64,000 nt of DNA from the IMG/VR virus record IMGVR_UViG_3300044997_001199, positions 1 to 64,000 of that record; one strand, given 5' to 3'. Shown in pieces: positions 45,066-56,500 of the stretch. The stretch's first letter is position 1. Every line of letters starts with the position of its first letter. Under the pieces are notes generated by a model, which saw only the letters and a list, made by a program, of their open reading frames with translations, did not search any database and had not been told where the DNA came from. A program made the translations under genes and the position numbers.

Positions 45066-45140
45066 TGGTACCTGGTGACGGGATCGAACCGCCGACCTTC
45101 TCCTTGTAAGGGAGACACTCTACCGCTGAGTTAACCAGGC
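45066..45140 (-). tRNA. tRNA-Val (TAC)
   Basis: Complete cloverleaf, loop CT-TAC-AA, TTCGATC T-loop, encoded CCA. Confidence 0.95.
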
Positions 45141-45145
45141 AATTC

Positions 45146-45180
45146 TAGTCGGAGTGCAAGGATTCCAACCCTACACTCCA
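45146..45180 (-). pseudogene. tRNA remnant folded as an acceptor+T-arm minihelix
   Basis: TGGAGTG-TAGGG-TTGGAAT-CCTTG-CACTCCG-ACTA; D and anticodon arms absent. Confidence 0.7.
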
Positions 45181-45183
45181 AAT

Positions 45184-45262
45184 TGGTCTCGATGGCAAGA
45201 TTCGAACTTGCGACATCCTGCTCCCAAAGCAGGCGGAATGAACCAGACTATCCTACACCGAT
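45184..45262 (-). tRNA. tRNA-Pro (TGG), first base pair mismatched
   Basis: Cloverleaf with CCTGC-TTTGGGA-GCAGG, CCA; A1:G72 mismatch. Confidence 0.88.
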
Positions 45263-45263
45263 T

Positions 45264-45337
45264 TGGTGGAGGATAACAGAATCGAACTGTTAATCTCGGC
45301 TTGCAAAGCCGATGTTATCCCATTTAACTAATCCCCC
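45264..45337 (-). tRNA. tRNA-Ala (TGC)
   Basis: G3:U70 identity pair, loop TT-TGC-AA, CCA. Confidence 0.93.
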
Positions 45338-45342
45338 AAACT

Positions 45343-45419
45343 TGGCTCCCCAGCGTGGGCTCGAACCACGGACATTCTGATTAACAGTCAGACGCATCTA
45401 CCAACTGTGCTACTGGGGA
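45343..45419 (-). tRNA. tRNA-Asn (GTT)
   Basis: TCTGA-CTGTTAA-TCAGA, full cloverleaf, CCA. Confidence 0.95.
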
Positions 45420-45425
45420 ATATTC

Positions 45426-45455
45426 TTAACTGCACTACCGCTGTACTACCTTGGA
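45426..45455 (-). pseudogene. 5' fragment of a tRNA (acceptor strand plus D arm)
   Basis: TCCAAGGTAGTACAGCGGTAGTGCAGTTAA; rest missing. Confidence 0.55.
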
Positions 45456-45462
45456 ATAAAAA

Positions 45463-45538
45463 TGGTGCCGGTTGTCGGATTCGAACTGACGACCTATCGC
45501 TTACAAGGCGATTGCAACTACCACTGTGCTAAACCGGC
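45463..45538 (-). tRNA. tRNA-Thr (TGT)
   Basis: ATCGC-CTTGTAA-GCGAT, full cloverleaf, CCA. Confidence 0.95.
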
Positions 45539-45564
45539 TTAAAACTATATATCTCTTTTATTGC

Positions 45565-45654
45565 TGGCGGAGAGTATGAGATTCGAATCTAAGTGTCCAT
45601 TTCTGAACGACGGGTTAGCAAACCGCTGCGTTAACCACTCTCGGTCAACTGTCA
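45565..45654 (-). pseudogene. Degenerate tRNA-Ser (GCT)
   Basis: Long variable arm, loop TT-GCT-AA, 3' ACTCTCC-GCCA but 5' strand TGACAGT mismatched. Confidence 0.75.
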
Positions 45655-45661
45655 AATTTTT

Positions 45662-45739
45662 AAGTAGGGCCCCGGAGGATCGAACTCCGAACCTATCCAT
45701 TATGAGTGGATTGCTCTAGACCAATTGAGCTAGGGCCCT
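45662..45739 (-). tRNA. tRNA with CAT anticodon, probably Ile2 (lysidine) rather than Met
   Basis: AGGGCCC acceptor, ATCCA-CTCATAA-TGGAT; CCA not encoded (ACTT); adjacent to tilS. Confidence 0.85.
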
Positions 45740-45781
45740 GTGACTTTACAACTAAAATTTTTCCGCGTTCGCAATGTTGCA

Positions 45782-45811
45782 ATTATAACCAGTGTCTTTG
45801 ATTCTTGTCAA
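45782..45811 (-). promoter_or_regulatory. sigma70-type promoter for the tRNA cluster
   Basis: TTGACA-N18-TATAAT. Confidence 0.7.
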
Positions 45812-46397
45812 GGATTTTTCTTTGCACCATGGTAGCGATTCCAGGATTTACTTTAAGAATTTCGGGCATGACGGCATGTCGGATCTGATTACGACTGTAT
45901 CGCAGATCACGATTGCTGTGGTCTTCGTACCAGGTCACAGCGTGCCGCTGAGTCCAGGCAACCAGCTGTTGTTTGGGTGTTCTTAGGAACGGTCTCACAC
46001 AGCGTCCTCGCTGATAGTTCATGATTCTGGGCTGACCATGACACGATCCCCAGATCCAAGTTTCCACGGCATCGTCGAGATGATGGGCCAAAACCACCGG
46101 TTCGGATCCTGGCAAACGGTCAAGGAATCCATAGCGTTCGTTGCGCCAGTGTTCTTCGGGACTGATGCCCGGGGGCCTCGGTTGAGAGATTTTTCCGATG
46201 GCGAGAGGTATGTCATGCTGCGAGCAGTACGTCCTGACCGTGGCCAGGCCATGCTCACTGGCCACGGTACCGTGATCAAAAAAGGCCACCTGGGTATGGT
46301 GTCGCCGACGGAGAAAGTCCAGGGCTGCCATGGAATCCAACCCGCCTGAGCAGGCGACGACAACAGTTCTAGGCAGGGCGTTCAACAACCTGATCAT
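45783..46397 (-). CDS. tilS: tRNA(Ile)-lysidine synthetase, short form
   Basis: ACSGGLDSMA PP-loop, RNERY, LAHHLDDAVET, RPFL, W.EDHSN, RNQIRH. Confidence 0.9.
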   Translation of the reverse strand: MIRLLNALPRTVVVACSGGLDSMAALDFLRRRHHTQVAFFDHGTVASEHGLATVRTYCSQHDIPLAIGKISQPRPPGISPEEHWRNERYGFLDRLPGSEPVVLAHHLDDAVETWIWGSCHGQPRIMNYQRGRCVRPFLRTPKQQLVAWTQRHAVTWYEDHSNRDLRYSRNQIRHAVMPEILKVNPGIATMVQRKILDKNQRHWL

Positions 46398-46401
46398 GTA
46401 A

Positions 46402-46650
46402 CTACTTGCGTTCGCGCAGTTGTTGACAGTACACACAGCACCGTACTCCGGGCATGAGTCGTTGTCGAGCCTCGGGGATGTCGTCACCACATTCTTCGCA
46501 ATGAGCCAAACTGGGGAATCGTGCCTGTTCGGCTAACTGTCGCTGTACATCGGCCACGGCATTCATGCCTAGGTGTATGGCATGCAGCTGACCCATCTCA
46601 GCTTCTTCTTCGTTGTTGTAAACAAAATCATCTTTATCCATAGTTGACAT
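46402..46650 (-). CDS. DksA/TraR family C4 zinc-finger protein
   Basis: CEECGDDIPEARQRLMPGVRCCVYCQ. Confidence 0.9.
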   Translation of the reverse strand: MSTMDKDDFVYNNEEEAEMGQLHAIHLGMNAVADVQRQLAEQARFPSLAHCEECGDDIPEARQRLMPGVRCCVYCQQLRERK

Positions 46651-46789
46651 TGTAACAAACTTTAAGTTAGAGATCAACTGTTGACGTAAATACTGTATGA
46701 GAATTTTTTCAATACAAAGTCGCACTGCCTGTGTAACCAGAACAGATCGTTGTTCATAGTGTCAAATATTTATCGACGATAAATACCGG

Positions 46790-47461
46790 GTGAAACTGAA
46801 CTTTCATCCCACGGACTGTGCCGGTGTTTATAGGATCACTGTGATAGATCCGCCTATGTCGGTGTCAGAGATCGTGGCACATCTTGCTGCAGATCCAGAC
46901 TGGGAACAGCCGGTCACGCATCCTGATACTGCCCATTGGGCAGTGAAATCTCTCACAGATTGGCAGACTCACGACTCTGTGTTGCAGGATATCTGTTGGC
47001 AATTGGACAGTGCCTGTGTCAAACAGCAGATACTGGATTTAGCCAGCCGCGATCAGATATTCCAAGAATTTTGGAGTTTTCCTAACCGGTCATGCCTGGA
47101 TTCCATTACCAATACCTACGCATACTTTATACAGACTCCGGCTCATTATGAAAATCATCCATGGCATGTTGATTGCAAAAATCTGTTGCTACAGGGCATG
47201 ATTTATCTTGTGGAACAGCCCAGCAACGATCAAGGCACTTGGTTTTGTAGAGATACATCGGTTCTGTACAACAGACATGACCCGGAAACCGAGCTGCGCT
47301 TGCCAGCAGCGCCCTGGCAAGGGTGGTTGTTGATCAACTCAGATCTCAGCTATCACCGTGCCTTGAATCTCACCGAGCAACCACGTTTCAGTATAAAGTT
47401 CGGACTGCAATTCAATCTCAAACGGCCACATCCGCGGATACCTGCAACACACAGTATCTAG
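46790..47461 (+). CDS. Hypothetical protein, possibly 2OG-Fe(II) oxygenase-like
   Basis: PWHVD (HxD), distal YHRA, RFSI; TAAATA at 46780. Confidence 0.55.
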   Translation: MKLNFHPTDCAGVYRITVIDPPMSVSEIVAHLAADPDWEQPVTHPDTAHWAVKSLTDWQTHDSVLQDICWQLDSACVKQQILDLASRDQIFQEFWSFPNRSCLDSITNTYAYFIQTPAHYENHPWHVDCKNLLLQGMIYLVEQPSNDQGTWFCRDTSVLYNRHDPETELRLPAAPWQGWLLINSDLSYHRALNLTEQPRFSIKFGLQFNLKRPHPRIPATHSI

Positions 47462-47484
47462 CAAATTTCTCAAGGAAACTGTCA

Positions 47485-47850
47485 ATGTCTAGCGTTTGGG
47501 GGTACCACTTAACTCTAGATTGTCGTGATGCAAATCGAGCACTCATGATGGAACGATACAATGTTGAATGCTTCGTCAAAGAACTGGTCAGTCGAATCAA
47601 CATGGATCCAATTGGAGAGCCGTGGATCGAATATACCGCGGCCGACTGTCCAGACAAAGCCGGATTCACTGCAGTGCAGATCATCGTAGCATCCAGCATT
47701 GTTGCACATTTTGTTAACGACACTGGTGACATCTATCTTGATGTGTTCGGTTTCCGAGAATTTGACATCGACGTGGTCAAATCGGTAGTACAAGATTATT
47801 TCAAACCCAAAAACATGAGAATGAACTTTCTCACTCGTCATGCTGGTTGA
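47485..47850 (+). CDS. S-adenosylmethionine decarboxylase-like proenzyme with altered active site
   Basis: WGYHLTLDC, GFTAVQII...SIVAHF, IYLDVF..REFD; canonical ES/TS and SC motifs changed. Confidence 0.7.
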   Translation: MSSVWGYHLTLDCRDANRALMMERYNVECFVKELVSRINMDPIGEPWIEYTAADCPDKAGFTAVQIIVASSIVAHFVNDTGDIYLDVFGFREFDIDVVKSVVQDYFKPKNMRMNFLTRHAG

Positions 47851-47851
47851 T

Positions 47852-47927
47852 TGGCCCGCCTCGAAGGATTCAAACGTACGACCACTGGGTTCGAAGACCA
47901 GAGCTCTTCCACTGAGCTAAGAGCGGT
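47852..47927 (-). pseudogene. Degenerate tRNA-Arg (TCG)
   Basis: Loop CT-TCG-AA and GCCA end, but broken T stem and TTTGAAT T-loop. Confidence 0.7.
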
Positions 47928-47930
47928 GTG

Positions 47931-47960
47931 TGGCACGCCTGGGTAGATTCAAGCCCGCGG
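47931..47960 (-). pseudogene. 3' tRNA fragment
   Basis: GCGGGCTTGAATCTACCCAGGCGTGCCA, T-arm and acceptor-like only. Confidence 0.5.
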
Positions 47961-47980
47961 CCTTTCCAACGGTACGAATT

Positions 47981-48058
47981 ACGAGTAGAGGGCAGGATTC
48001 AAACCTACGGTTTTAAGGATTTGCAGTCCCTTGCATTGGGCCACTCTGCCACCTCTAC
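47981..48058 (-). tRNA. tRNA-Cys (GCA), T-loop variant
   Basis: GTAGAGG/CCTCTAC acceptor, U73, AGGGA-CTGCAAA-TCCTT; TTTGAAT loop, CCA not encoded. Confidence 0.82.
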
Positions 48059-48062
48059 GTTT

Positions 48063-48097
48063 TGTCTCCGGGGGAGGAAATCGAACCCAACACCCGC
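48063..48097 (-). pseudogene. 3' tRNA fragment
   Basis: GGGTTCGATTTCCTCCCCCGGAGACA, T-loop plus acceptor-like strand. Confidence 0.45.
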
Positions 48098-48128
48098 ATG
48101 TTTGTGCTGAGCTGGATACAAAGCTTCT

Positions 48129-48157
48129 AAAGAAAATGGCCCATCGCTGGGCCATTT
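48129..48157 (-). terminator. Intrinsic terminator after the tmRNA coding piece
   Basis: AAATGGCCCA-GCGA-TGGGCCATTT then TCTTT. Confidence 0.8.
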
Positions 48158-48467
48158 GGTCGTTCTGTTGCCAGGTGACCAACCCCGACAGATCAAGCCG
48201 CTAGGCGGAGATCCTCAGCATAAACGTCGTCATTGGCGTTTATAAGTTTTGCTAGGTTTACGACCTTCGCCTCTCGTGCTGTCTGTATCTGTACTCATTT
48301 GTCCTGTCGAAACCAAAACCGGCCCATCATAAGCATACTAGATTTTATCGATACTACCGAATAATGGGAGGGCGACTCCATCTTACACCAGTATGCTTAT
48401 GGTGGACCGGGCGAGAGTCGAACTCGCGTCCAGAACACCTTTCCTTCAACTTCATACAGCAATAACT
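48130..48467 (-). ncRNA. ssrA: Circularly permuted two-piece tmRNA
   Basis: Acceptor piece ending GTTCGACTCTCGCCCGGTCCACCA (CCA at 48400) lies upstream of the coding piece starting GGGCCGGTTTTGGTTTCGAC (48325); G3:U70; tag ANDDVYAEDLRLAA* at 48237-48193. Confidence 0.92.
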
Positions 48468-48608
48468 GTTATTTATGTATTTTTTTGAACAGTCGGCAGT
48501 CTTCTGTGCTTCTTCGTTGTACCACAGACGTCGAGTGTAGTCCTGATCGATGTCCCGAAGATACTGGTCGGTGAAATACTTCACATGACCCTTGACCAAA
48601 TAAAACAA
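48354..48608 (-). CDS. Small hypothetical protein; 3' part reads into the tmRNA, so its true end is uncertain
   Basis: MFYLVKGHVKYFTDQYLRDIDQDYTRRLWYNEEAQ looks coding; the remainder overlaps promoter and RNA. Confidence 0.4.
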   Translation of the reverse strand: MFYLVKGHVKYFTDQYLRDIDQDYTRRLWYNEEAQKTADCSKKYINNSYCCMKLKERCSGREFDSRPVHHKHTGVRWSRPPIIR

Positions 48609-48668
48609 ATTGTATGTGTCCTATACAATATTTAAAATCAAAGCCCAAAAACTAATGCGATATGTTAA

Positions 48669-48887
48669 TCAGTCGCGGCAGCAATGTTGATCACGGTGAT
48701 CGAGACTCACATAGTCATCTTGATACACAGTTTGTTGACCACACTGTGACGGTGTTTGGATAGGTGAATGGATGAATGCACAGAGACATTTGCCGCATTG
48801 ATAGTCAGGCCGCATGATACGCTCACGCAAGGCTTCGGGATCTGAGTACTCGGAGGTTCGGATGTTTCGGCAGACACAAACTACCAT
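48669..48887 (-). CDS. Bfd-like [2Fe-2S] small protein
   Basis: MVVCVCRNI...CGKC Cys spacing. Confidence 0.6.
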   Translation of the reverse strand: MVVCVCRNIRTSEYSDPEALRERIMRPDYQCGKCLCAFIHSPIQTPSQCGQQTVYQDDYVSLDHRDQHCCRD

Positions 48888-48989
48888 GTCACGACCAGGT
48901 ACACGATGAAAGAAACAACCGCGATTGCCCAACAAGCAAATATGAATATCTGTAGCATTCCATATTTATGGCCTCACACAGTTATTGCG

Positions 48990-49168
48990 CGGCGGCAGCC
49001 AGTCGGCATAGACGCGCTGGAAGTCGCGCTCGACGGTGCGGGCCCGGTAGTCGATGCCGAACTGCTTTGCATAGTCGTCGATCGTGCGCGCGCTGCCAAG
49101 CCCGAACACGCCCAGCTCGCGCCGCTCGTAGAGCAGGTCGGCGAGCCGCTCGTAGAGCAGGTCAGCGA
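48990..49168 (-). pseudogene. GC-rich internal fragment of a foreign gene, GlcNAc-transferase-like C-terminus
   Basis: ADLLYERRELGVFGLGSARTIDDYAKQFGIDYRARTVERDFQRVYADWL; GLG..R....Y....GID pattern; no start codon of its own. Confidence 0.5.
49121..49168. repeat. 24-bp tandem duplication at the res truncation point
   Basis: GCCGCTCGTAGAGCAGGTC(G/A)GCGA x2, one mismatch. Confidence 0.95.
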
Positions 49169-49276
49169 GAACGCACACTTGCGCGATTTACGGCGCCAGT
49201 CATCCTGCGCATCTTTCAGGTTGTTCAATGCATCGCGCACGGCGTCGCGTTGATAGTCCTTGAGGGTGAACTTCAT
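49160..49276 (-). pseudogene. res: Type III restriction subunit (Res), first ~39 codons only
   Basis: MKFTLKDYQRDAV...AFSLT follows mod and breaks just before the expected Walker A motif. Confidence 0.8.
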
Positions 49277-49278
49277 CT

Positions 49279-51381
49279 TTATTCCCCATTCGCAAAGCTG
49301 AAATTGGACAGGTACGACTCATACAGCCGCACTGGCTCGATGCCATCAGGTAGGCGCTTGGCAATGGCCTGAAAGCGCCGGTCGTCGTCGGTGACGATGT
49401 AGGCAATGCGCAAAGCACTGGCTTGACTCACTGCAAGGATGAACGGCGTGGCTTGATCCACCTCGGTCAACAAACCATAGGTATCCGCCACTGCCCATCC
49501 CTCGGGCGGCAATTTGTCGATGCGGCGGCCTTGTGCCCCCGCCCGCAACCACAGCATGGGCGCGATGCGTGCATACGCAAGGTTGTGATTGACGGCGCTC
49601 TTGGCCTCGTAGGTCAGGGTGAAGAACTCGGCGTTTTCCTCGAAACCCTCGGCCATCGGAAATTCGTCGGTGAACTTGTAATCGCCCTTGATCGGCTCAC
49701 CAGCAGGCGTCGTGCCGGTAATCGCAGCAGCCACGCGCGGCTTGGTGATGTAGTCGCAGATGCCGTGCTTTTCCCATTCGGGATCTCCGGGTCGCAAACC
49801 CTGCTCTCGCAGCACCTTTTGCTCATCAGCGGCCACCTCGTTGTTGGTCACCGAAATGCACTGGCGTCGCCCACCGTCTTGACGGTTCAGGCGCATCACG
49901 GCATGGGCCGTGGTGCCGGATCCGGAGAAGAAATCAAGAACTATTGCGTCAATCTTCTTGGAAACAAAAAAACGTAGTGCATCTTCTACTGCATAAAGAG
50001 ATTTGGGGAAATCAAAAGCGTGACCAGGAATAAGAGCCTTGATTATTGACTTCCCATGCTCTTGTGCACTATGCGACTCATAATCCCACTGAGTTGTTGG
50101 CATAGTTGCTTTACCCGTCTCAAATTCAACTATTGCAGCGCCACTGGCTTCGTAGCCCTTAACCTTAAGGTCACCCGCCGAAATCTCCTTTATTTGACCA
50201 CTTGTTAGGTAATAAAGCGCAGGCTCTTTATTTCCTCGCCCTGCTACGGCCTTAACATATCCGCCTTTAAGACGCGACCTAAGTGAATCAGGTGTTAGCC
50301 CCCAGTTCATCTCCGTTCCATCAGGTCGAACGGGCCAGATCGTAAAACACCCATCTCGACCACTTACAGTATGACGTTCAATGTGCGGTGGAATGGGCTC
50401 ACCAATCGCCTCAATAGCAGATGTCTTCTTGTTTACATAAATGGGGAAAAATTGGGACTGTCCACCTTTGGCAGTTCCTCTGCGGGATTCAATGTCTGTA
50501 CGCCGCAGGCTCGCCCACCTTACGGCGGCACCTGTATCGGCCCTGCTAGGGTTAAGTCTGGCCGAGCCAAACAATGCAAAATATATAAACTCATTTGTTC
50601 GAGTAAATTCATTTGCTCGAACTATTCCCTTTCGGTTAATTACGGATGTCACCATTTGAATCTTGGCTTCCGGAAAAACCTGCTCCAATAAAAGGCCCAA
50701 CCGAAGGTATTCTTTTTCGTCAATTGAAGCGATAAGCACTGAGTCGGCAGGATTCAGTAATTCCTTTGCCACTAGCAGGCGCCTCTCCATCATCGCCAGC
50801 CACTTGCTGTGTCGATATAGGTCGTCACCTTCGACGTAGTCATTGTTGTACTTCCAGTCCTTTGCGCCTGAGTTGTAGGGCGGGTCGATGTAGATGGCGT
50901 CGACTTTGCCGCGGTGTGTGTAGGTCAGCACCTTCAACACGTGGTAGTTCTCGCCGTTCATGACCGTGTGGAAGGGTTTGTCGCCGCCGCGCGTGACCTT
51001 GCCGGTGCTAACCATGCCTGGATAAATCGTGTCGCGGAACTCGGCCACCACAATCAAAGCGGCCAGCGGCACCGATTGTATTTCTGGAACTGCTGTATCC
51101 AGCAGTTCCAAGTCAGCAACTTTAATGGCCTTGTGAATGGCTTTGACCTGCCACAAGCGCTGATCTCCCTTTTTGACCGAGCCACGGTCAGGCAGCACGC
51201 GCACCTTGTCACCCTTGCGGACGGGGCGCAGCGGCAACTCCACCGCCTCCGGACTATGGCGTTCAAAGTTCAGACCAAACGGCAGCCGAGAGGAGAGCAA
51301 TTTGAACTCGCGTTCGAGATCGGCTCCTAGATGTGAGTCCTTGGCTTTGGCCTTAGCGAGTAGATCAGTGAGTCGAGACAC
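49279..51381 (-). CDS. mod: Type III R-M methyltransferase (Mod), intact
   Basis: GENYHVL, IYIDPPYN (motif IV), WL.MMERRL, FDFPKS, LDFFSGSGTT (motif I); res start directly downstream. Confidence 0.93.
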   Translation of the reverse strand: MSRLTDLLAKAKAKDSHLGADLEREFKLLSSRLPFGLNFERHSPEAVELPLRPVRKGDKVRVLPDRGSVKKGDQRLWQVKAIHKAIKVADLELLDTAVPEIQSVPLAALIVVAEFRDTIYPGMVSTGKVTRGGDKPFHTVMNGENYHVLKVLTYTHRGKVDAIYIDPPYNSGAKDWKYNNDYVEGDDLYRHSKWLAMMERRLLVAKELLNPADSVLIASIDEKEYLRLGLLLEQVFPEAKIQMVTSVINRKGIVRANEFTRTNEFIYFALFGSARLNPSRADTGAAVRWASLRRTDIESRRGTAKGGQSQFFPIYVNKKTSAIEAIGEPIPPHIERHTVSGRDGCFTIWPVRPDGTEMNWGLTPDSLRSRLKGGYVKAVAGRGNKEPALYYLTSGQIKEISAGDLKVKGYEASGAAIVEFETGKATMPTTQWDYESHSAQEHGKSIIKALIPGHAFDFPKSLYAVEDALRFFVSKKIDAIVLDFFSGSGTTAHAVMRLNRQDGGRRQCISVTNNEVAADEQKVLREQGLRPGDPEWEKHGICDYITKPRVAAAITGTTPAGEPIKGDYKFTDEFPMAEGFEENAEFFTLTYEAKSAVNHNLAYARIAPMLWLRAGAQGRRIDKLPPEGWAVADTYGLLTEVDQATPFILAVSQASALRIAYIVTDDDRRFQAIAKRLPDGIEPVRLYESYLSNFSFANGE

Positions 51382-51411
51382 GGCGCCCCCCTGTATTTGG
51401 TGATGCTCTCG

Positions 51412-51567
51412 TCAGCTTGGTTTCCCCAGACGGCCCACCCAGGCCGCCCGCCTCTGAAAATACTGCGGTCGGTCGGTACCTTGTGCAATGTAGGCTAAGA
51501 CCTTGTTGCCATCCACGAGATAGGTGTGGTTGTAGCTCCAGTCTGTGACTTCTCTTACTGCTTCCAT
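51412..51567 (-). pseudogene. Small phage gene interrupted by the mod-bearing segment
   Basis: MEAVREVTDWSYNHTYLVDGNKVLAYIAQGTDRPQYF in phage-like codons switches near 51455 to GC-rich RRAAWVGRLGKPS*. Confidence 0.6.
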
Positions 51568-51594
51568 GATGGACCCGATGCGTGGCAATGATTC

Positions 51595-51623
51595 ATTGTA
51601 ACCTAGATTGCTTCGATGGTCAA
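51595..51623 (-). promoter_or_regulatory. sigma70-type early promoter
   Basis: TTGACC-N17-TACAAT. Confidence 0.75.
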
Positions 51624-51629
51624 TCGTGC

Positions 51630-51854
51630 TCAGTTGGGGACGTCGTATTGCCAGGCAAGATTAACTACCAAAACATCGTCGCGCTGGAGAGCAGCATGCA
51701 GGCTCTGGGCAATGGCAGCATCGGCCAGGAGATAGTGAGCCGTGACCAGCTCATCCACTGTGACGTGCTCAGATCCGATTTGACCATCCAGTACAGCCTG
51801 CACGACCATGCTACGATCAATGCTGATGAAGATCATGTCGTCGCGATCATTCAT
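51630..51854 (-). CDS. Small early hypothetical protein
   Basis: 74-aa ORF with ATGA overlap to upstream gene. Confidence 0.65.
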   Translation of the reverse strand: MNDRDDMIFISIDRSMVVQAVLDGQIGSEHVTVDELVTAHYLLADAAIAQSLHAALQRDDVLVVNLAWQYDVPN

Positions 51855-52075
51855 GCTGCGTGATCCTGGGTCAGGATTTCCACGGTGAGCCTTTGCACAG
51901 TTTGTCTCATGCTCTGTGACATCTTGCGCAAACTGGTATCATCGGCCTGCAAGGGCACAATGGCGCTGACCGCGCCTATCATCTTGGCATTGGCAATGTC
52001 TTCGCTGGAACTCGCGGCCCTGAAAGCCGCGCGCATATCGTTCCAATCCTTGATGAATTCTGCATATGCGGTCAT
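51851..52075 (-). CDS. Small early hypothetical protein
   Basis: 74-aa ORF, RBS AAGGAG. Confidence 0.75.
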   Translation of the reverse strand: MTAYAEFIKDWNDMRAAFRAASSSEDIANAKMIGAVSAIVPLQADDTSLRKMSQSMRQTVQRLTVEILTQDHAA

Positions 52076-52084
52076 GCTAGCTCC

Positions 52085-52498
52085 TTAGGCAGTGACAGTG
52101 TAGGGACGGTTCCAACGGCCCAGTTGCACATCCACATACCAACCGCGATCATGGTAGTCATACTCGATCTCGCTGCGATCCCAGTTGCCGTCGTTGAGAG
52201 CACTAATCAGTTCGCTCAGTGCCTCACGGGCCACACCGTCAAAATGATTGCGATAGTGGTAGACGTTGACGTCAATGTCGCCCCAGTCAGCACTCCGGGC
52301 AAAGTAGTCTGCGTGGTTGCGGCCCATGACGTCTTTGTGGTTGCCAACAAAGTCAATCTTACCACCGGTGAGAGTAAGCACCACGGTCCTGTGGTTGCGG
52401 ACACTCAGGCTTCCCTTGATGCCGTACTTGTTGAGGATGTTCTTGACAGCGGGGGCAATTTGCGTCTTGCGTTCTTGACTGAAATATGCCATGGTCAC
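52085..52498 (-). CDS. Small early hypothetical protein
   Basis: 137-aa ORF, RBS AGGAG, promoter upstream. Confidence 0.8.
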   Translation of the reverse strand: MTMAYFSQERKTQIAPAVKNILNKYGIKGSLSVRNHRTVVLTLTGGKIDFVGNHKDVMGRNHADYFARSADWGDIDVNVYHYRNHFDGVAREALSELISALNDGNWDRSEIEYDYHDRGWYVDVQLGRWNRPYTVTA

Positions 52499-52526
52499 TG
52501 CTCCTGTGTTGTTACGCTATGTGTGT

Positions 52527-52555
52527 ATATTACAGTGAGCCCCGTTATCGGTCAA
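52527..52555 (-). promoter_or_regulatory. sigma70-type early promoter
   Basis: TTGACC-N17-TAATAT. Confidence 0.75.
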
Positions 52556-52594
52556 CCATATTGTATTTCGTCGGGTGTGCTACTGCTGTCAGAG

Positions 52595-54893
<2,299 letters not shown>

Positions 54894-56291: not shown

Positions 56292-56473
56292 TCTTCAACT
56301 CCGAAATGTTGTTTGAATCTATCTCTATAAAGTTGTTTTGCGTGTTCTAAGAAAGTCCTATACAAATTATTTTCATAATCTTCATTACTCATAAAACTCA
56401 AAGGATCTATAGCGGCTATGAGATGAACATCGGAAGAATACTTGATGCCTTGTATTTGTCTAACACAATGCAT
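56288..56473 (-). CDS. Small hypothetical protein; start uncertain
   Basis: Ends KQHFGVEE with ATGA overlap; annotated start overlaps the -10 box. Confidence 0.45.
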   Translation of the reverse strand: MHCVRQIQGIKYSSDVHLIAAIDPLSFMSNEDYENNLYRTFLEHAKQLYRDRFKQHFGVEE

Positions 56474-56500
56474 TGTAGGCTAGTCTCAGTTATCGGTCAA
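56472..56500 (-). promoter_or_regulatory. sigma70-type early promoter
   Basis: TTGACC-N17-TACAAT. Confidence 0.75.

What the first reader, a model, noticed from the sequence alone, without database searches (positions are those of the whole stretch)
48988..51455. Captured type III mod with the restriction subunit amputated
Seen: a ~2.45-kb block with its own RBS, complete Mod, only 39 codons of Res and a few codons of an upstream gene, interrupting a small phage gene right behind a sigma70 early promoter (51595-51623). No integrase or terminal repeats. Established: Mod alone methylates one strand and protects against the cognate Res. Inference: the phage took the protective half of a host R-M system, placed it under early expression, and lost the toxic half.
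Basis: partly seen in the sequence, partly recalled or inferred. Interest (0 to 1): 0.7.

Follow-up and report, generated by a model that had tools for sequence, protein, structure and literature searches.

The report
Phage-borne orphan type III methylase
A large lake phage carries an intact DNA-methylase gene from a bacterial type III restriction system whose cutting partner is reduced to 39 codons, a well-preserved example of the known trick of phages marking their own DNA to escape restriction.

Summary
A complete 700-aa type III-family mod gene (49279-51381, minus strand) has its own RBS and GTG start. Exactly 39 codons of res follow it, cut just before the helicase Walker A motif. The host is a myovirus record of at least 215 kb. 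Four JGI assemblies and Logan unitigs carry the same junctions, and depth arithmetic puts both phage flanks on one molecule, so this is not a chimera.

They are an internal piece of a glycosyltransferase gene, 100% identical to a co-occurring Burkholderiales-like lake bacterium. It is joined to res by 4 nt of microhomology and a 24-bp slippage duplication.

Mod shows no decay: 2 conservative changes in 255 family-invariant columns, and dN/dS of 0.03-0.06. An unrelated viral contig (L014) carries the same Mod family with res collapsed in frame to 47 codons. Two more Mod-bearing viral contigs show no res.

Three points are not established: the mod donor, early expression, and interruption of a phage gene (that ORF has no homologue and no empty site was found). 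Methylation itself is untested.

Verdict: a new member of a known kind (phage orphan methyltransferase of R-M origin), with an unusually legible scar and a host clue.

The parts
51595..51623 (-). Sigma-70-like promoter match, TTGACC-17-TACAAT
   Evidence: 10 of 12 matches, the best in 48000-52600. The identical hexamer pair recurs at 56500-56472, and TTGACC-17-TAATAT at 52555-52527. This is a consensus match only; neither use nor timing is shown.
51412..51568 (-). Small phage ORFan (51 aa) that reads across the left junction into the foreign block
   Evidence: JGI called it as a 51-aa gene. Its only database match is itself. Its original length is unknown.
51394..51455 (-). GC-rich left end of the foreign block, origin unknown (boundaries approximate)
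   Evidence: GC rises at about 51450. No similarity to regions upstream of mod in six bacterial loci. No branching unitig here in the lake runs.
51386..51392 (-). Shine-Dalgarno-like AGGGGGG of mod
   Evidence: Homology with L074 reaches 51393, so the RBS came in with the gene.
49279..51381 (-). Intact type III-family mod (700 aa; DPPY at 166-169, FxGxG at 484-489)
49160..49276 (-). Res remnant: first 39 codons, ending just before Walker A
49118..49165 (-). 24-bp tandem duplication at the res/glycosyltransferase joint. The first copy starts on the GACC that ends the res remnant.
48989..49152 (-). 164-bp internal fragment (codons 271-324) of a PF11397 GlcNAc-type glycosyltransferase gene of a lake Burkholderiales-like bacterium
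   Evidence: 100% identical to L077:8755-8918. 54 of 54 aa identical to P0154. 96.3% identical to Burkholderiales MAG contig L070. Family assignment. Forms a shared unitig with summed depth.
48974..49276 (-). 100-aa fusion ORF: 39 Res codons followed by an out-of-frame read through the glycosyltransferase piece. Probably a meaningless remnant.
   Evidence: The glycosyltransferase coding frame is the other frame (70-aa ORF, 48966-49178).
48669..48887 (-). Next phage gene downstream, a small Cys-rich ORF. Phage DNA resumes at 48988 or below.
   Evidence: No Pfam or PHROG hit.
48131..48519 (-). Phage-encoded permuted tmRNA of the betaproteobacterial type (context and host clue)
   Evidence: ARAGORN. 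RF01850, 121.9 bits against a gathering score of 84.

Best explanation
The block is a scar of horizontal capture.

Anatomy (shown): a type III-family mod gene came into the phage with its own RBS and GTG start. Its partner res was destroyed by a deletion. The breakpoint in codon 39 is joined to 164 bp copied from a chromosomal glycosyltransferase gene of a co-occurring Burkholderiales-like bacterium. That joint has 4 nt of microhomology (GACC) and a 24-bp slippage duplication. The copied piece is joined in turn to phage DNA at 48988/48989. The bacterium is the probable host.

Mechanism (inferred from type III biology): Mod acts without Res, as in r- m+ deletion mutants (PMC3874151), and methylates one strand of a short asymmetric site on replicating phage DNA. 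Progeny therefore leave every cell already modified and resist the cognate type III enzyme in the next cell. This is the 'protect DNA to be exported' role of orphan methyltransferases on mobile elements (PMC12707154). Loss of Res removes a nuclease that would endanger unmodified phage and host DNA.

Inferred only: enzymatic activity, target motif, protection, expression timing, and whether res was deleted in the phage or before capture.
For: 1. The setting is a phage. Tail sheath, large terminase and virion proteins lie in the window, and the record is a 215-kb virus record.
2. Mod is type III. The PADLOC MTase_III match is full length. It matches the solved Mods of Mbo45V and EcoP15I. Motif order is DPPY then FxGxG. 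The six fetched loci of the four closest bacterial homologues all carry mod plus an 861-862-aa PF04851 res.
3. Res is cut at codon 39, before Walker A. There is no other res in the record.
4. Mod is not decaying. It differs at 2 of 255 columns invariant in 26 homologues (the homologues themselves differ at 0-11), is the same 700 aa length, and has dN/dS 0.03-0.06.
5. The structure is real. Sequence across 48501-51900 is identical in three other JGI assemblies. Logan unitig 49123-52633 is unbranched in X2-X4. In X4 the 164-bp node has depth 8.9 against flanks of 7.8 and 8.4, so both flanks lie on one molecule.
6. The direction and source of the 164 bp are clear. In the bacterium it is part of an intact 531-aa gene in an LPS-heptose cluster.
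7. The host clade is also indicated by a beta-type tmRNA.
8. The outcome recurs. Of 42 viral loci with this Mod family, 33 keep a full res. L014 has res collapsed in frame to MKFTL plus the last ~41 aa, and L008 and L020 show no res.
9. There is precedent for phage-acquired protective methyltransferases (PMC4190342).
Against: - There are no methylation data and no expression data.
- The donor of mod is unidentified. The best match is 89% aa and 79-81% nt, from unnamed metagenome contigs.
- No cognate mod-res was seen in the probable host population. It was absent from the lake runs at 31-mer level, from the incomplete MAG G001, from 7 genomes of its family and from 301 sampled genomes of its order (no positive control). 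So the restriction system the phage would be evading has not been shown to exist in its hosts.
- The promoter is only a consensus match.
- The record is 61% complete, so a res elsewhere cannot be strictly excluded.
Confidence: 0.7

Rival explanations
1. Neutral passenger. The mod is a recent, selectively irrelevant hitch-hiker left over from illegitimate recombination with bacterial DNA. It is intact only because too little time has passed.
For: The adjacent 164-bp piece is 100% identical to a living bacterium, so at least one event at this site is very recent. The region is a patchwork of ORFans with no conserved synteny. The cognate system was not seen in the probable host.
Against: The neighbouring res lost over 820 codons while mod lost none. 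Mod keeps every catalytic and family-invariant position. It is fixed and identical in four samples. The same mod-kept, res-lost outcome arose independently in L014, and L008 and L020 show no res.
Confidence: 0.15
2. The Mod works, but for another purpose. It could act as an epigenetic regulator of phage or host genes, like phase-variable Mods. It could also mark DNA against a different methylation-sensing defence rather than the cognate type III enzyme.
For: Orphan type III Mods act as regulators in bacteria (the phasevarion literature, e.g. PMC4417156, title and abstract seen). No cognate res was detected in the host pool.
Against: There is no simple-repeat tract or other phase-variation feature in the gene (no such repeat). 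The res remnant shows that it comes from a complete R-M operon. Nothing here supports regulation specifically.
Confidence: 0.1
3. Part of a complete phage-borne R-M system, as in phage P1, with a functional res elsewhere in the unsequenced 39% of the genome.
For: The record is estimated to be only 61% complete.
Against: The res that belongs to this mod lies right beside it and is destroyed. The only res-like sequence in the 215 kb is that remnant. In every intact relative, res directly follows mod.
Confidence: 0.03
4. Assembly chimera. Bacterial mod DNA was mis-joined into a phage contig through the 164-bp repeat shared with a bacterium.
For: The 164-bp node is longer than a short read and is shared with an abundant bacterium. 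Unitigs therefore break at 48989 and 49152.
Against: Mod and the left phage flank lie on one unbranched unitig, 49123-52633. In X4 the node depth (8.9) equals one phage path rather than two. Four JGI assemblies give the identical path. The bacterial contig L077 runs straight through its own gene, with no mod nearby. Flank depth ratios vary around 1 (0.80-1.08), with no consistent step.
Confidence: 0.02

Closest known systems
Phage-encoded orphan DNA methyltransferases acquired from host R-M systems (e.g. lactococcal 936-type phage MTases, PMC4190342; general role in PMC12707154)
   Same: A methyltransferase of R-M ancestry sits in a lytic-type phage genome without a working restriction partner. 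The expected role is self-protection of progeny DNA.
   Different: Here the gene is a type III Mod rather than a type II or Dam-like enzyme. The former partner and the recombination joints are still readable: 39 res codons, microhomology, a 24-bp duplication, and 164 bp of host filler. Activity is untested here, whereas it was shown for the lactococcal enzymes.
Type III R-M systems EcoP1I/EcoP15I (the phage P1 and p15B mod-res operons; PMC3874151)
   Same: Gene order is mod then res. Mod carries specificity in a variable central region. Mod is active alone in r- m+ deletion mutants and methylates one strand. The window's Mod matches EcoP15I Mod in sequence.
   Different: P1 keeps both genes and uses them as a working R-M system. 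This phage keeps only mod. Similarity to EcoP15I Mod is distant: two short stretches, E 2.8e-18. The partner family in relatives (861-862 aa) matches only the N-terminal ResIII helicase domain, and matches PADLOC REase_III models only weakly.
Viral contig L014 (IMGVR_UViG_3300033070_000721), found here
   Same: It has the same Mod family (71% aa), intact, in a viral contig among baseplate and tail genes, with res destroyed.
   Different: It is an independent event. Res is collapsed in frame to 5 N-terminal plus about 41 C-terminal codons, with no filler DNA. The TRD region and the viral backbone are different (60% GC).

Membership tests
Type III R-M modification subunit (beta-class N6-adenine methyltransferase) | N6_N4 methyltransferase domain with catalytic DPPY (motif IV) before the SAM-binding FxGxG (motif I), with a variable TRD between them | tested here: met
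   PF01555 at E 3.6e-18, spanning residues 160-501. D166-P-P-Y169 and F484-x-G-x-G489 are invariant in a 27-sequence alignment. Residues ~250-450 are the least conserved, at 69-73%.
Type III R-M modification subunit (beta-class N6-adenine methyltransferase) | Sequence membership in curated type III Mod models and similarity to solved type III Mods | tested here: met
   PADLOC MTase_III PDLC03645, residues 1-700 against model positions 1-709, E 9.4e-285. PDB hits are Mbo45V 7dsu, H. pylori Mod 6k0w and EcoP15I Mod 4zcf.
Type III R-M modification subunit (beta-class N6-adenine methyltransferase) | Encoded directly upstream of a res gene with an SF2 helicase (ResIII) domain | tested here: met
   The six fetched loci of the four closest bacterial homologues have an 861-862-aa PF04851 res 4 nt after mod. 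So do 33 of 42 viral loci. In the window only codons 1-39 remain.
Type III R-M modification subunit (beta-class N6-adenine methyltransferase) | Methylates one strand of a short asymmetric site, and is active without Res | not testable with these tools
   Known for EcoP1I/EcoP15I (PMC3874151). This needs methylome or enzyme data for this protein.
Type III R-M modification subunit (beta-class N6-adenine methyltransferase) | The partner Res carries a C-terminal endonuclease domain (a true restriction system rather than another helicase-linked system) | not tested
   The partner matches PADLOC REase_III models only weakly (E 7e-10 over ~80 aa). Precomputed Pfam lists ResIII plus YagJ. The nuclease motif was not examined.
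Phage orphan methyltransferase used for anti-restriction | Encoded in a phage genome that lacks a cognate restriction gene | tested here: met
   Phage hallmark genes are present. The only res-like sequence in the 215 kb is the 39-codon remnant. Caveat: the record is about 61% complete.
Phage orphan methyltransferase used for anti-restriction | Phage DNA is methylated at the enzyme's motif and thereby resists the cognate enzyme | not testable with these tools
   Only short-read contigs were available.
Phage orphan methyltransferase used for anti-restriction | The cognate R-M system is present in the host range | tested here: inconclusive
   Not found in MAG G001, in 7 genomes of its family or in 301 sampled genomes of its order (incomplete genomes, no positive control). 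Homologues at 72-76% do exist in Limnohabitans and Cupriavidus.
Self-mobile element (IS, transposon, integrative cassette, homing-endonuclease cassette) | Own recombinase or nuclease gene, terminal inverted repeats or a target-site duplication | tested here: not met
   The block holds only mod and gene fragments. There are no flanking repeats beyond chance-level 13-15-mers. The neighbours are ORFans with no nuclease hit.

The most novel reading that the evidence does not exclude
The res deletion may have been made inside the phage during infection of the Burkholderiales-like bacterium, by microhomology-mediated template switching. The path would be res codon 39 to the host glycosyltransferase gene via GACC, a 24-bp back-slip at GAGCGG, and 164 bp copied before return to phage DNA. 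The scar would then be both a record of how phages shed the toxic half of a captured R-M operon and an exact-sequence tag of the host. Together with L014, and with L008 and L020 where no res was found, it would indicate a recurrent, selected route from a mod-res operon to a phage orphan Mod for this one family.
Probability: 0.35. Interest if true: 0.6.

Novelty: new member of a known kind. Interest (0 to 1): 0.45.

Why it matters
Phage-borne orphan methyltransferases are usually inferred to descend from R-M systems. Here the descent can be read directly, because the operon partner, its breakpoint and the repair joints are all still present. An independent second case exists in the same Mod family.

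The 164-bp exact host fragment and the beta-type tmRNA also give an uncultured phage of at least 215 kb a concrete host hypothesis, a small-genome lake Burkholderiales lineage.

The locus also offers a simple test bed. Express this Mod, read its motif, and challenge the modified DNA with the intact mod-res operons of its relatives.

Tried and rejected
- Megablast of 47000-53500 against 50,697 GenBank phages: no match.
- Search for relatives with an empty site through four neighbouring genes in IMG/VR. Only distant relatives without synteny were found, so the pre-insertion sequence could not be reconstructed.
- Homologues of the small ORF at the left junction: none except itself.
- Exact 30-mer from the 164-bp piece in JGI metagenome contigs: 0 hits. 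The donor was found later through the protein route.
- I first guessed that the 164-bp piece was the C-terminus of Res or an HTH regulator. BLASTP against Res rejected the first. The PF11397 glycosyltransferase hits rejected the second.
- P0123, the apparent top hit of the representative search, is an artefact of a Listeria-Bacteroides repeat protein.
- The RTX protein next to the host glycosyltransferase gene is not a homologue of the phage's RTX/FG-GAP gene.
- The host MAG has no match to the phage tmRNA, RTX gene or Mod, but it is incomplete.
- tblastx hits of the left-end segment to L007 and L012 (E about 1e-3 in a small database) were judged to be chance.
- I recalled a BFD-like 2Fe-2S reading for the small Cys-rich ORF 48669-48887. 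No Pfam or PHROG hit supports it, so it is not claimed.
Full report
**What the window is**

The window is the first 64 kb of a 215,330-bp IMG/VR virus record, estimated 61% complete. It encodes tail sheath proteins, a large terminase and virion proteins. It also encodes eight tRNAs and a permuted tmRNA. It is therefore a large myovirus. Runs holding it are lake-water metagenomes. GC is about 50% over the window and rises to 58-60% at both ends of the block in question.

**The observation**

On the minus strand, a 700-aa ORF (49279-51381) carries PF01555. It matches the PADLOC type III methyltransferase model PDLC03645 end to end, E 9e-285. It also matches the solved type III Mods Mbo45V, H. 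pylori Mod and EcoP15I Mod.

- It starts with GTG, 4-5 nt after AGGGGGG. Bacterial homologues use the same GTG, and DNA homology with the closest one (L074) reaches 51393, so the RBS came in with the gene.
- Four nucleotides after the mod stop codon, an ATG opens the res reading frame. Its first 39 residues align with the 861-862-aa Res of relatives (E 6e-24). The match ends at ...CAFSLT, exactly where relatives continue with AVTGAGKT, the Walker A motif.
- DNA homology to six bacterial mod-res loci runs from 51381-51393 to 49160/49161 and no further.

The remaining 164 bp of the block (48989-49152) are not res. In another frame they encode 54 residues found at positions 271-324 of PF11397 (GlcNAc-type) glycosyltransferases.

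- The 164-mer is 100% identical to a 531-aa glycosyltransferase gene on a 9.6-kb, 65%-GC bacterial contig from a JGI metagenome (L077). There the gene follows heptose-LPS genes and an RTX protein.
- It is 96.3% identical to the orthologous gene of a Burkholderiales MAG (L070). L077 and L070 are 90% identical over 3.8 kb.
- In the bacterium the piece is part of an intact gene. In the phage it is a fragment. The transfer therefore went from bacterium to phage.
- In the lake runs this 164 bp forms its own unitig whose depth is the sum of the phage and another organism, for example 79.5 in X2 against about 45 for the phage. The other organism's flanks are those of L077.

**The joints**

- The res remnant ends in GACC. 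In the bacterial gene, GACC begins an 18-nt stretch that occurs twice, 24 bp apart, in the phage (duplication 49118-49165) but only once in the bacterium. The duplicated unit is bounded by GAGCGG.
- This is the signature of microhomology-mediated joining with a slippage step, not of site-specific recombination.
- At the right end, the bacterial sequence and phage DNA part at 48988/48989. If a CCG triplet slip is allowed, the break is 3-4 nt further on.
- The left end of the block (about 51394-51455) is GC-rich, matches nothing fetched, and shares no 31-mers with other organisms in the runs. Calling it 'a few codons of an upstream gene' is a guess.

**Is it an assembly artefact?**

No.

- Three further JGI assemblies, from samples 3300044953, 3300044956 and 3300044957, are 100% identical over 48501-51900.
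- Logan unitig 49123-52633 contains mod, the left junction and 1.2 kb of phage DNA, without a branch, in X2-X4.
- The 164-bp node is longer than a short read, so the right junction rests on two things. Thirty-nucleotide unitig overlaps exist on both sides. In X4, where the bacterium is nearly absent, the node has depth 8.9 while the two phage flanks have 7.8 and 8.4. If the flanks lay on different molecules, the node would have about 16.
- Flank depth ratios are 0.80-1.08 across four runs, with no consistent step.
- No joint indicating an empty-site variant was seen. These are contigs, however, and contigs drop rare variants.

**State of the gene**

- The phage Mod has the same length as its relatives.
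- It keeps DPPY (166-169) and FxGxG (484-489).
- It differs at only 2 of 255 columns that are invariant in 26 homologues (I141M, A151V). The homologues themselves differ at 0-11 such columns.
- dN/dS against bacterial genes is 0.03-0.06, with dS above 1.
- The TRD region is 82-90% identical to the best hits, so the specificity may be shared with them.
- It is the only PF01555, PF02086 or PF00145 methyltransferase in the 215 kb.
- The only res-like sequence in the record is the remnant.

**Donor and host**

The donor of mod is unknown.

- The best matches are 89% aa and 79-81% nt, from unnamed metagenome contigs and a Pseudomonadota MAG. More distant ones are in Pseudomonas, Rahnella, Aeromonas, Limnohabitans and Cupriavidus.
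- No second, non-phage copy is visible in the eight lake runs.
- The family was not found in the MAG related to the glycosyltransferase donor, in 7 genomes of its family, or in 301 sampled genomes of its order (incomplete genomes, no positive control).

The probable host rests on other evidence. The 164-bp fragment is an exact copy of a co-occurring bacterium's DNA. The phage tmRNA matches the Betaproteobacteria model RF01850 at 121.9 bits, against a gathering score of 84.

'Host R-M system' is therefore plausible for the clade but not shown for the actual host.

**Order of events**

Two histories fit.

- (a) The phage once carried mod-res. It then lost res by a deletion repaired with filler copied from the chromosome of the cell it was infecting.
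- (b) A bacterial strain already had res fused to the glycosyltransferase gene, and the phage captured that arrangement.

In L077 and L070 the gene upstream of the glycosyltransferase is an RTX protein, not res. The 164 bp are identical to an abundant bacterium, while mod has no bacterial twin in the samples. Both points lean towards (a) but do not prove it.

**Recurrence**

Among 42 IMG/VR loci with a Mod of this family:

- 33 have a full-length res directly downstream.
- 5 are cut by contig ends.
- 4 lack res.

One of the four, L014, is a 46-kb viral contig. Its intact 701-aa Mod (71% identical, different TRD) lies among baseplate and tail genes. Its res is collapsed in frame to 47 codons, MKFTL plus the last ~41 residues. 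L008 (integrase upstream, a second methyltransferase downstream) and L020 have Mod without a detectable res. L038, the fourth, has a truncated Mod. At least one independent event, in L014, has therefore produced the same mod-kept, res-destroyed outcome. That argues for selection rather than accident.

**Mechanism**

In type III systems Mod carries sequence recognition in its variable central region. It methylates one strand of an asymmetric site. It works without Res, as shown by r- m+ deletion mutants. Res depends on Mod (PMC3874151).

A phage that expresses Mod during replication releases fully modified progeny whatever the genotype of the cell it grew in. This is the 'protect DNA to be exported' role described for orphan methyltransferases of mobile elements (PMC12707154). 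[quoted passage not shown]

Early expression is not required for this role and would not protect the incoming genome.

The promoter-like TTGACC-17-TACAAT at 51623-51595 is the best match in its neighbourhood and recurs at 56500. However, the count of such matches is not above shuffled expectation. No terminator-like site separates it from mod on the minus strand. Transcription from it is inferred only.

**The 'interrupted small gene'**

The 51-aa ORF (51412-51568) starts in phage DNA and ends 13 codons into the GC-rich segment. On the far side of the block, all three frames hit a stop within seven codons of 48988. If the block were simply removed, the ORF would be 40-46 aa. The insertion may have clipped only its last few codons or replaced an unknown stretch. 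With no homologue and no empty site, this cannot be decided.

**Verdict**

This is a real, intact, phage-borne orphan type III mod with a legible res scar and a host-derived filler. It is a new member of a known kind. The details about host origin of mod, early expression and gene interruption are not established. Function awaits methylome or expression tests.

Noticed in passing
window 48131-48519 (-), with tRNAs at 45066-48058 (-): The phage encodes a permuted (two-piece) tmRNA of the betaproteobacterial type (RF01850, 121.9 bits; tag peptide ANDDVYAEDLRLAA) next to eight tRNA genes. I used it only as a host clue. No match was found in the incomplete MAG G001.
   Followed up: partly
window 52594 to at least 53000 (3' end of the 674-aa FG-GAP/RTX gene 52595-54619, minus strand): Starting at 52594, one base beyond the gene's stop codon (52595-52597), this stretch is matched at about 98-99% by contigs of another entity. 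That entity is far more abundant than the phage in runs X5 and X6 (35-60x against 2-5x) and adds about 48x in X2. Beyond 52594 its sequence differs from the phage. It could be a second host-derived or shared segment bounding this variable region. No relative was found in IMG/VR or in G001.
   Followed up: partly
L014:6001-8250 (IMGVR_UViG_3300033070_000721): A second viral contig has an intact Mod of the same family among baseplate and tail genes. Its res is reduced by an in-frame deletion to 47 codons (MKFTL plus the last ~41 residues).
   Followed up: yes
L008:4779-9294 and L020: L008 has an integrase, then a Mod of this family, then a second unrelated DNA methyltransferase (phrog_363), with no res. 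L020 has a Mod (39% identical) with no res hit in 6 kb downstream.
   Followed up: partly
window 49800-50800: The central third of mod, roughly the TRD, has 47-50% GC against 56-60% in the flanking parts of the gene. In L014, DNA homology to relatives breaks off in the corresponding region of its mod (L014:6750-7370). This pattern would be expected if specificity domains are exchanged within the family.
   Followed up: no
window 56472-56500, 52527-52555, 51595-51623 (all minus strand): Promoter-like sites share TTGACC at -35. Two share TACAAT at -10 and CTAG just upstream of it. Two share GGTTGACCGATAAC. This may be a phage promoter family in the minus-strand small-gene cluster.
   Followed up: partly
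window 45783-47850: Auxiliary-type genes lie beside the tRNA array: a PP-loop ATPase (PF01171), a DksA/TraR-like zinc finger (phrog_54) and an S-adenosylmethionine decarboxylase (phrog_3125).
   Followed up: no
L070:3839-4984 and L077:5681-9541: In the bacterial relatives the glycosyltransferase gene follows an RTX protein and heptose-LPS genes. In the MAG contig it abuts a tyrosine integrase gene on the other strand, so it may sit at the edge of a genomic island. Its role in surface polysaccharide synthesis makes it a candidate phage-receptor modifier.
   Followed up: no
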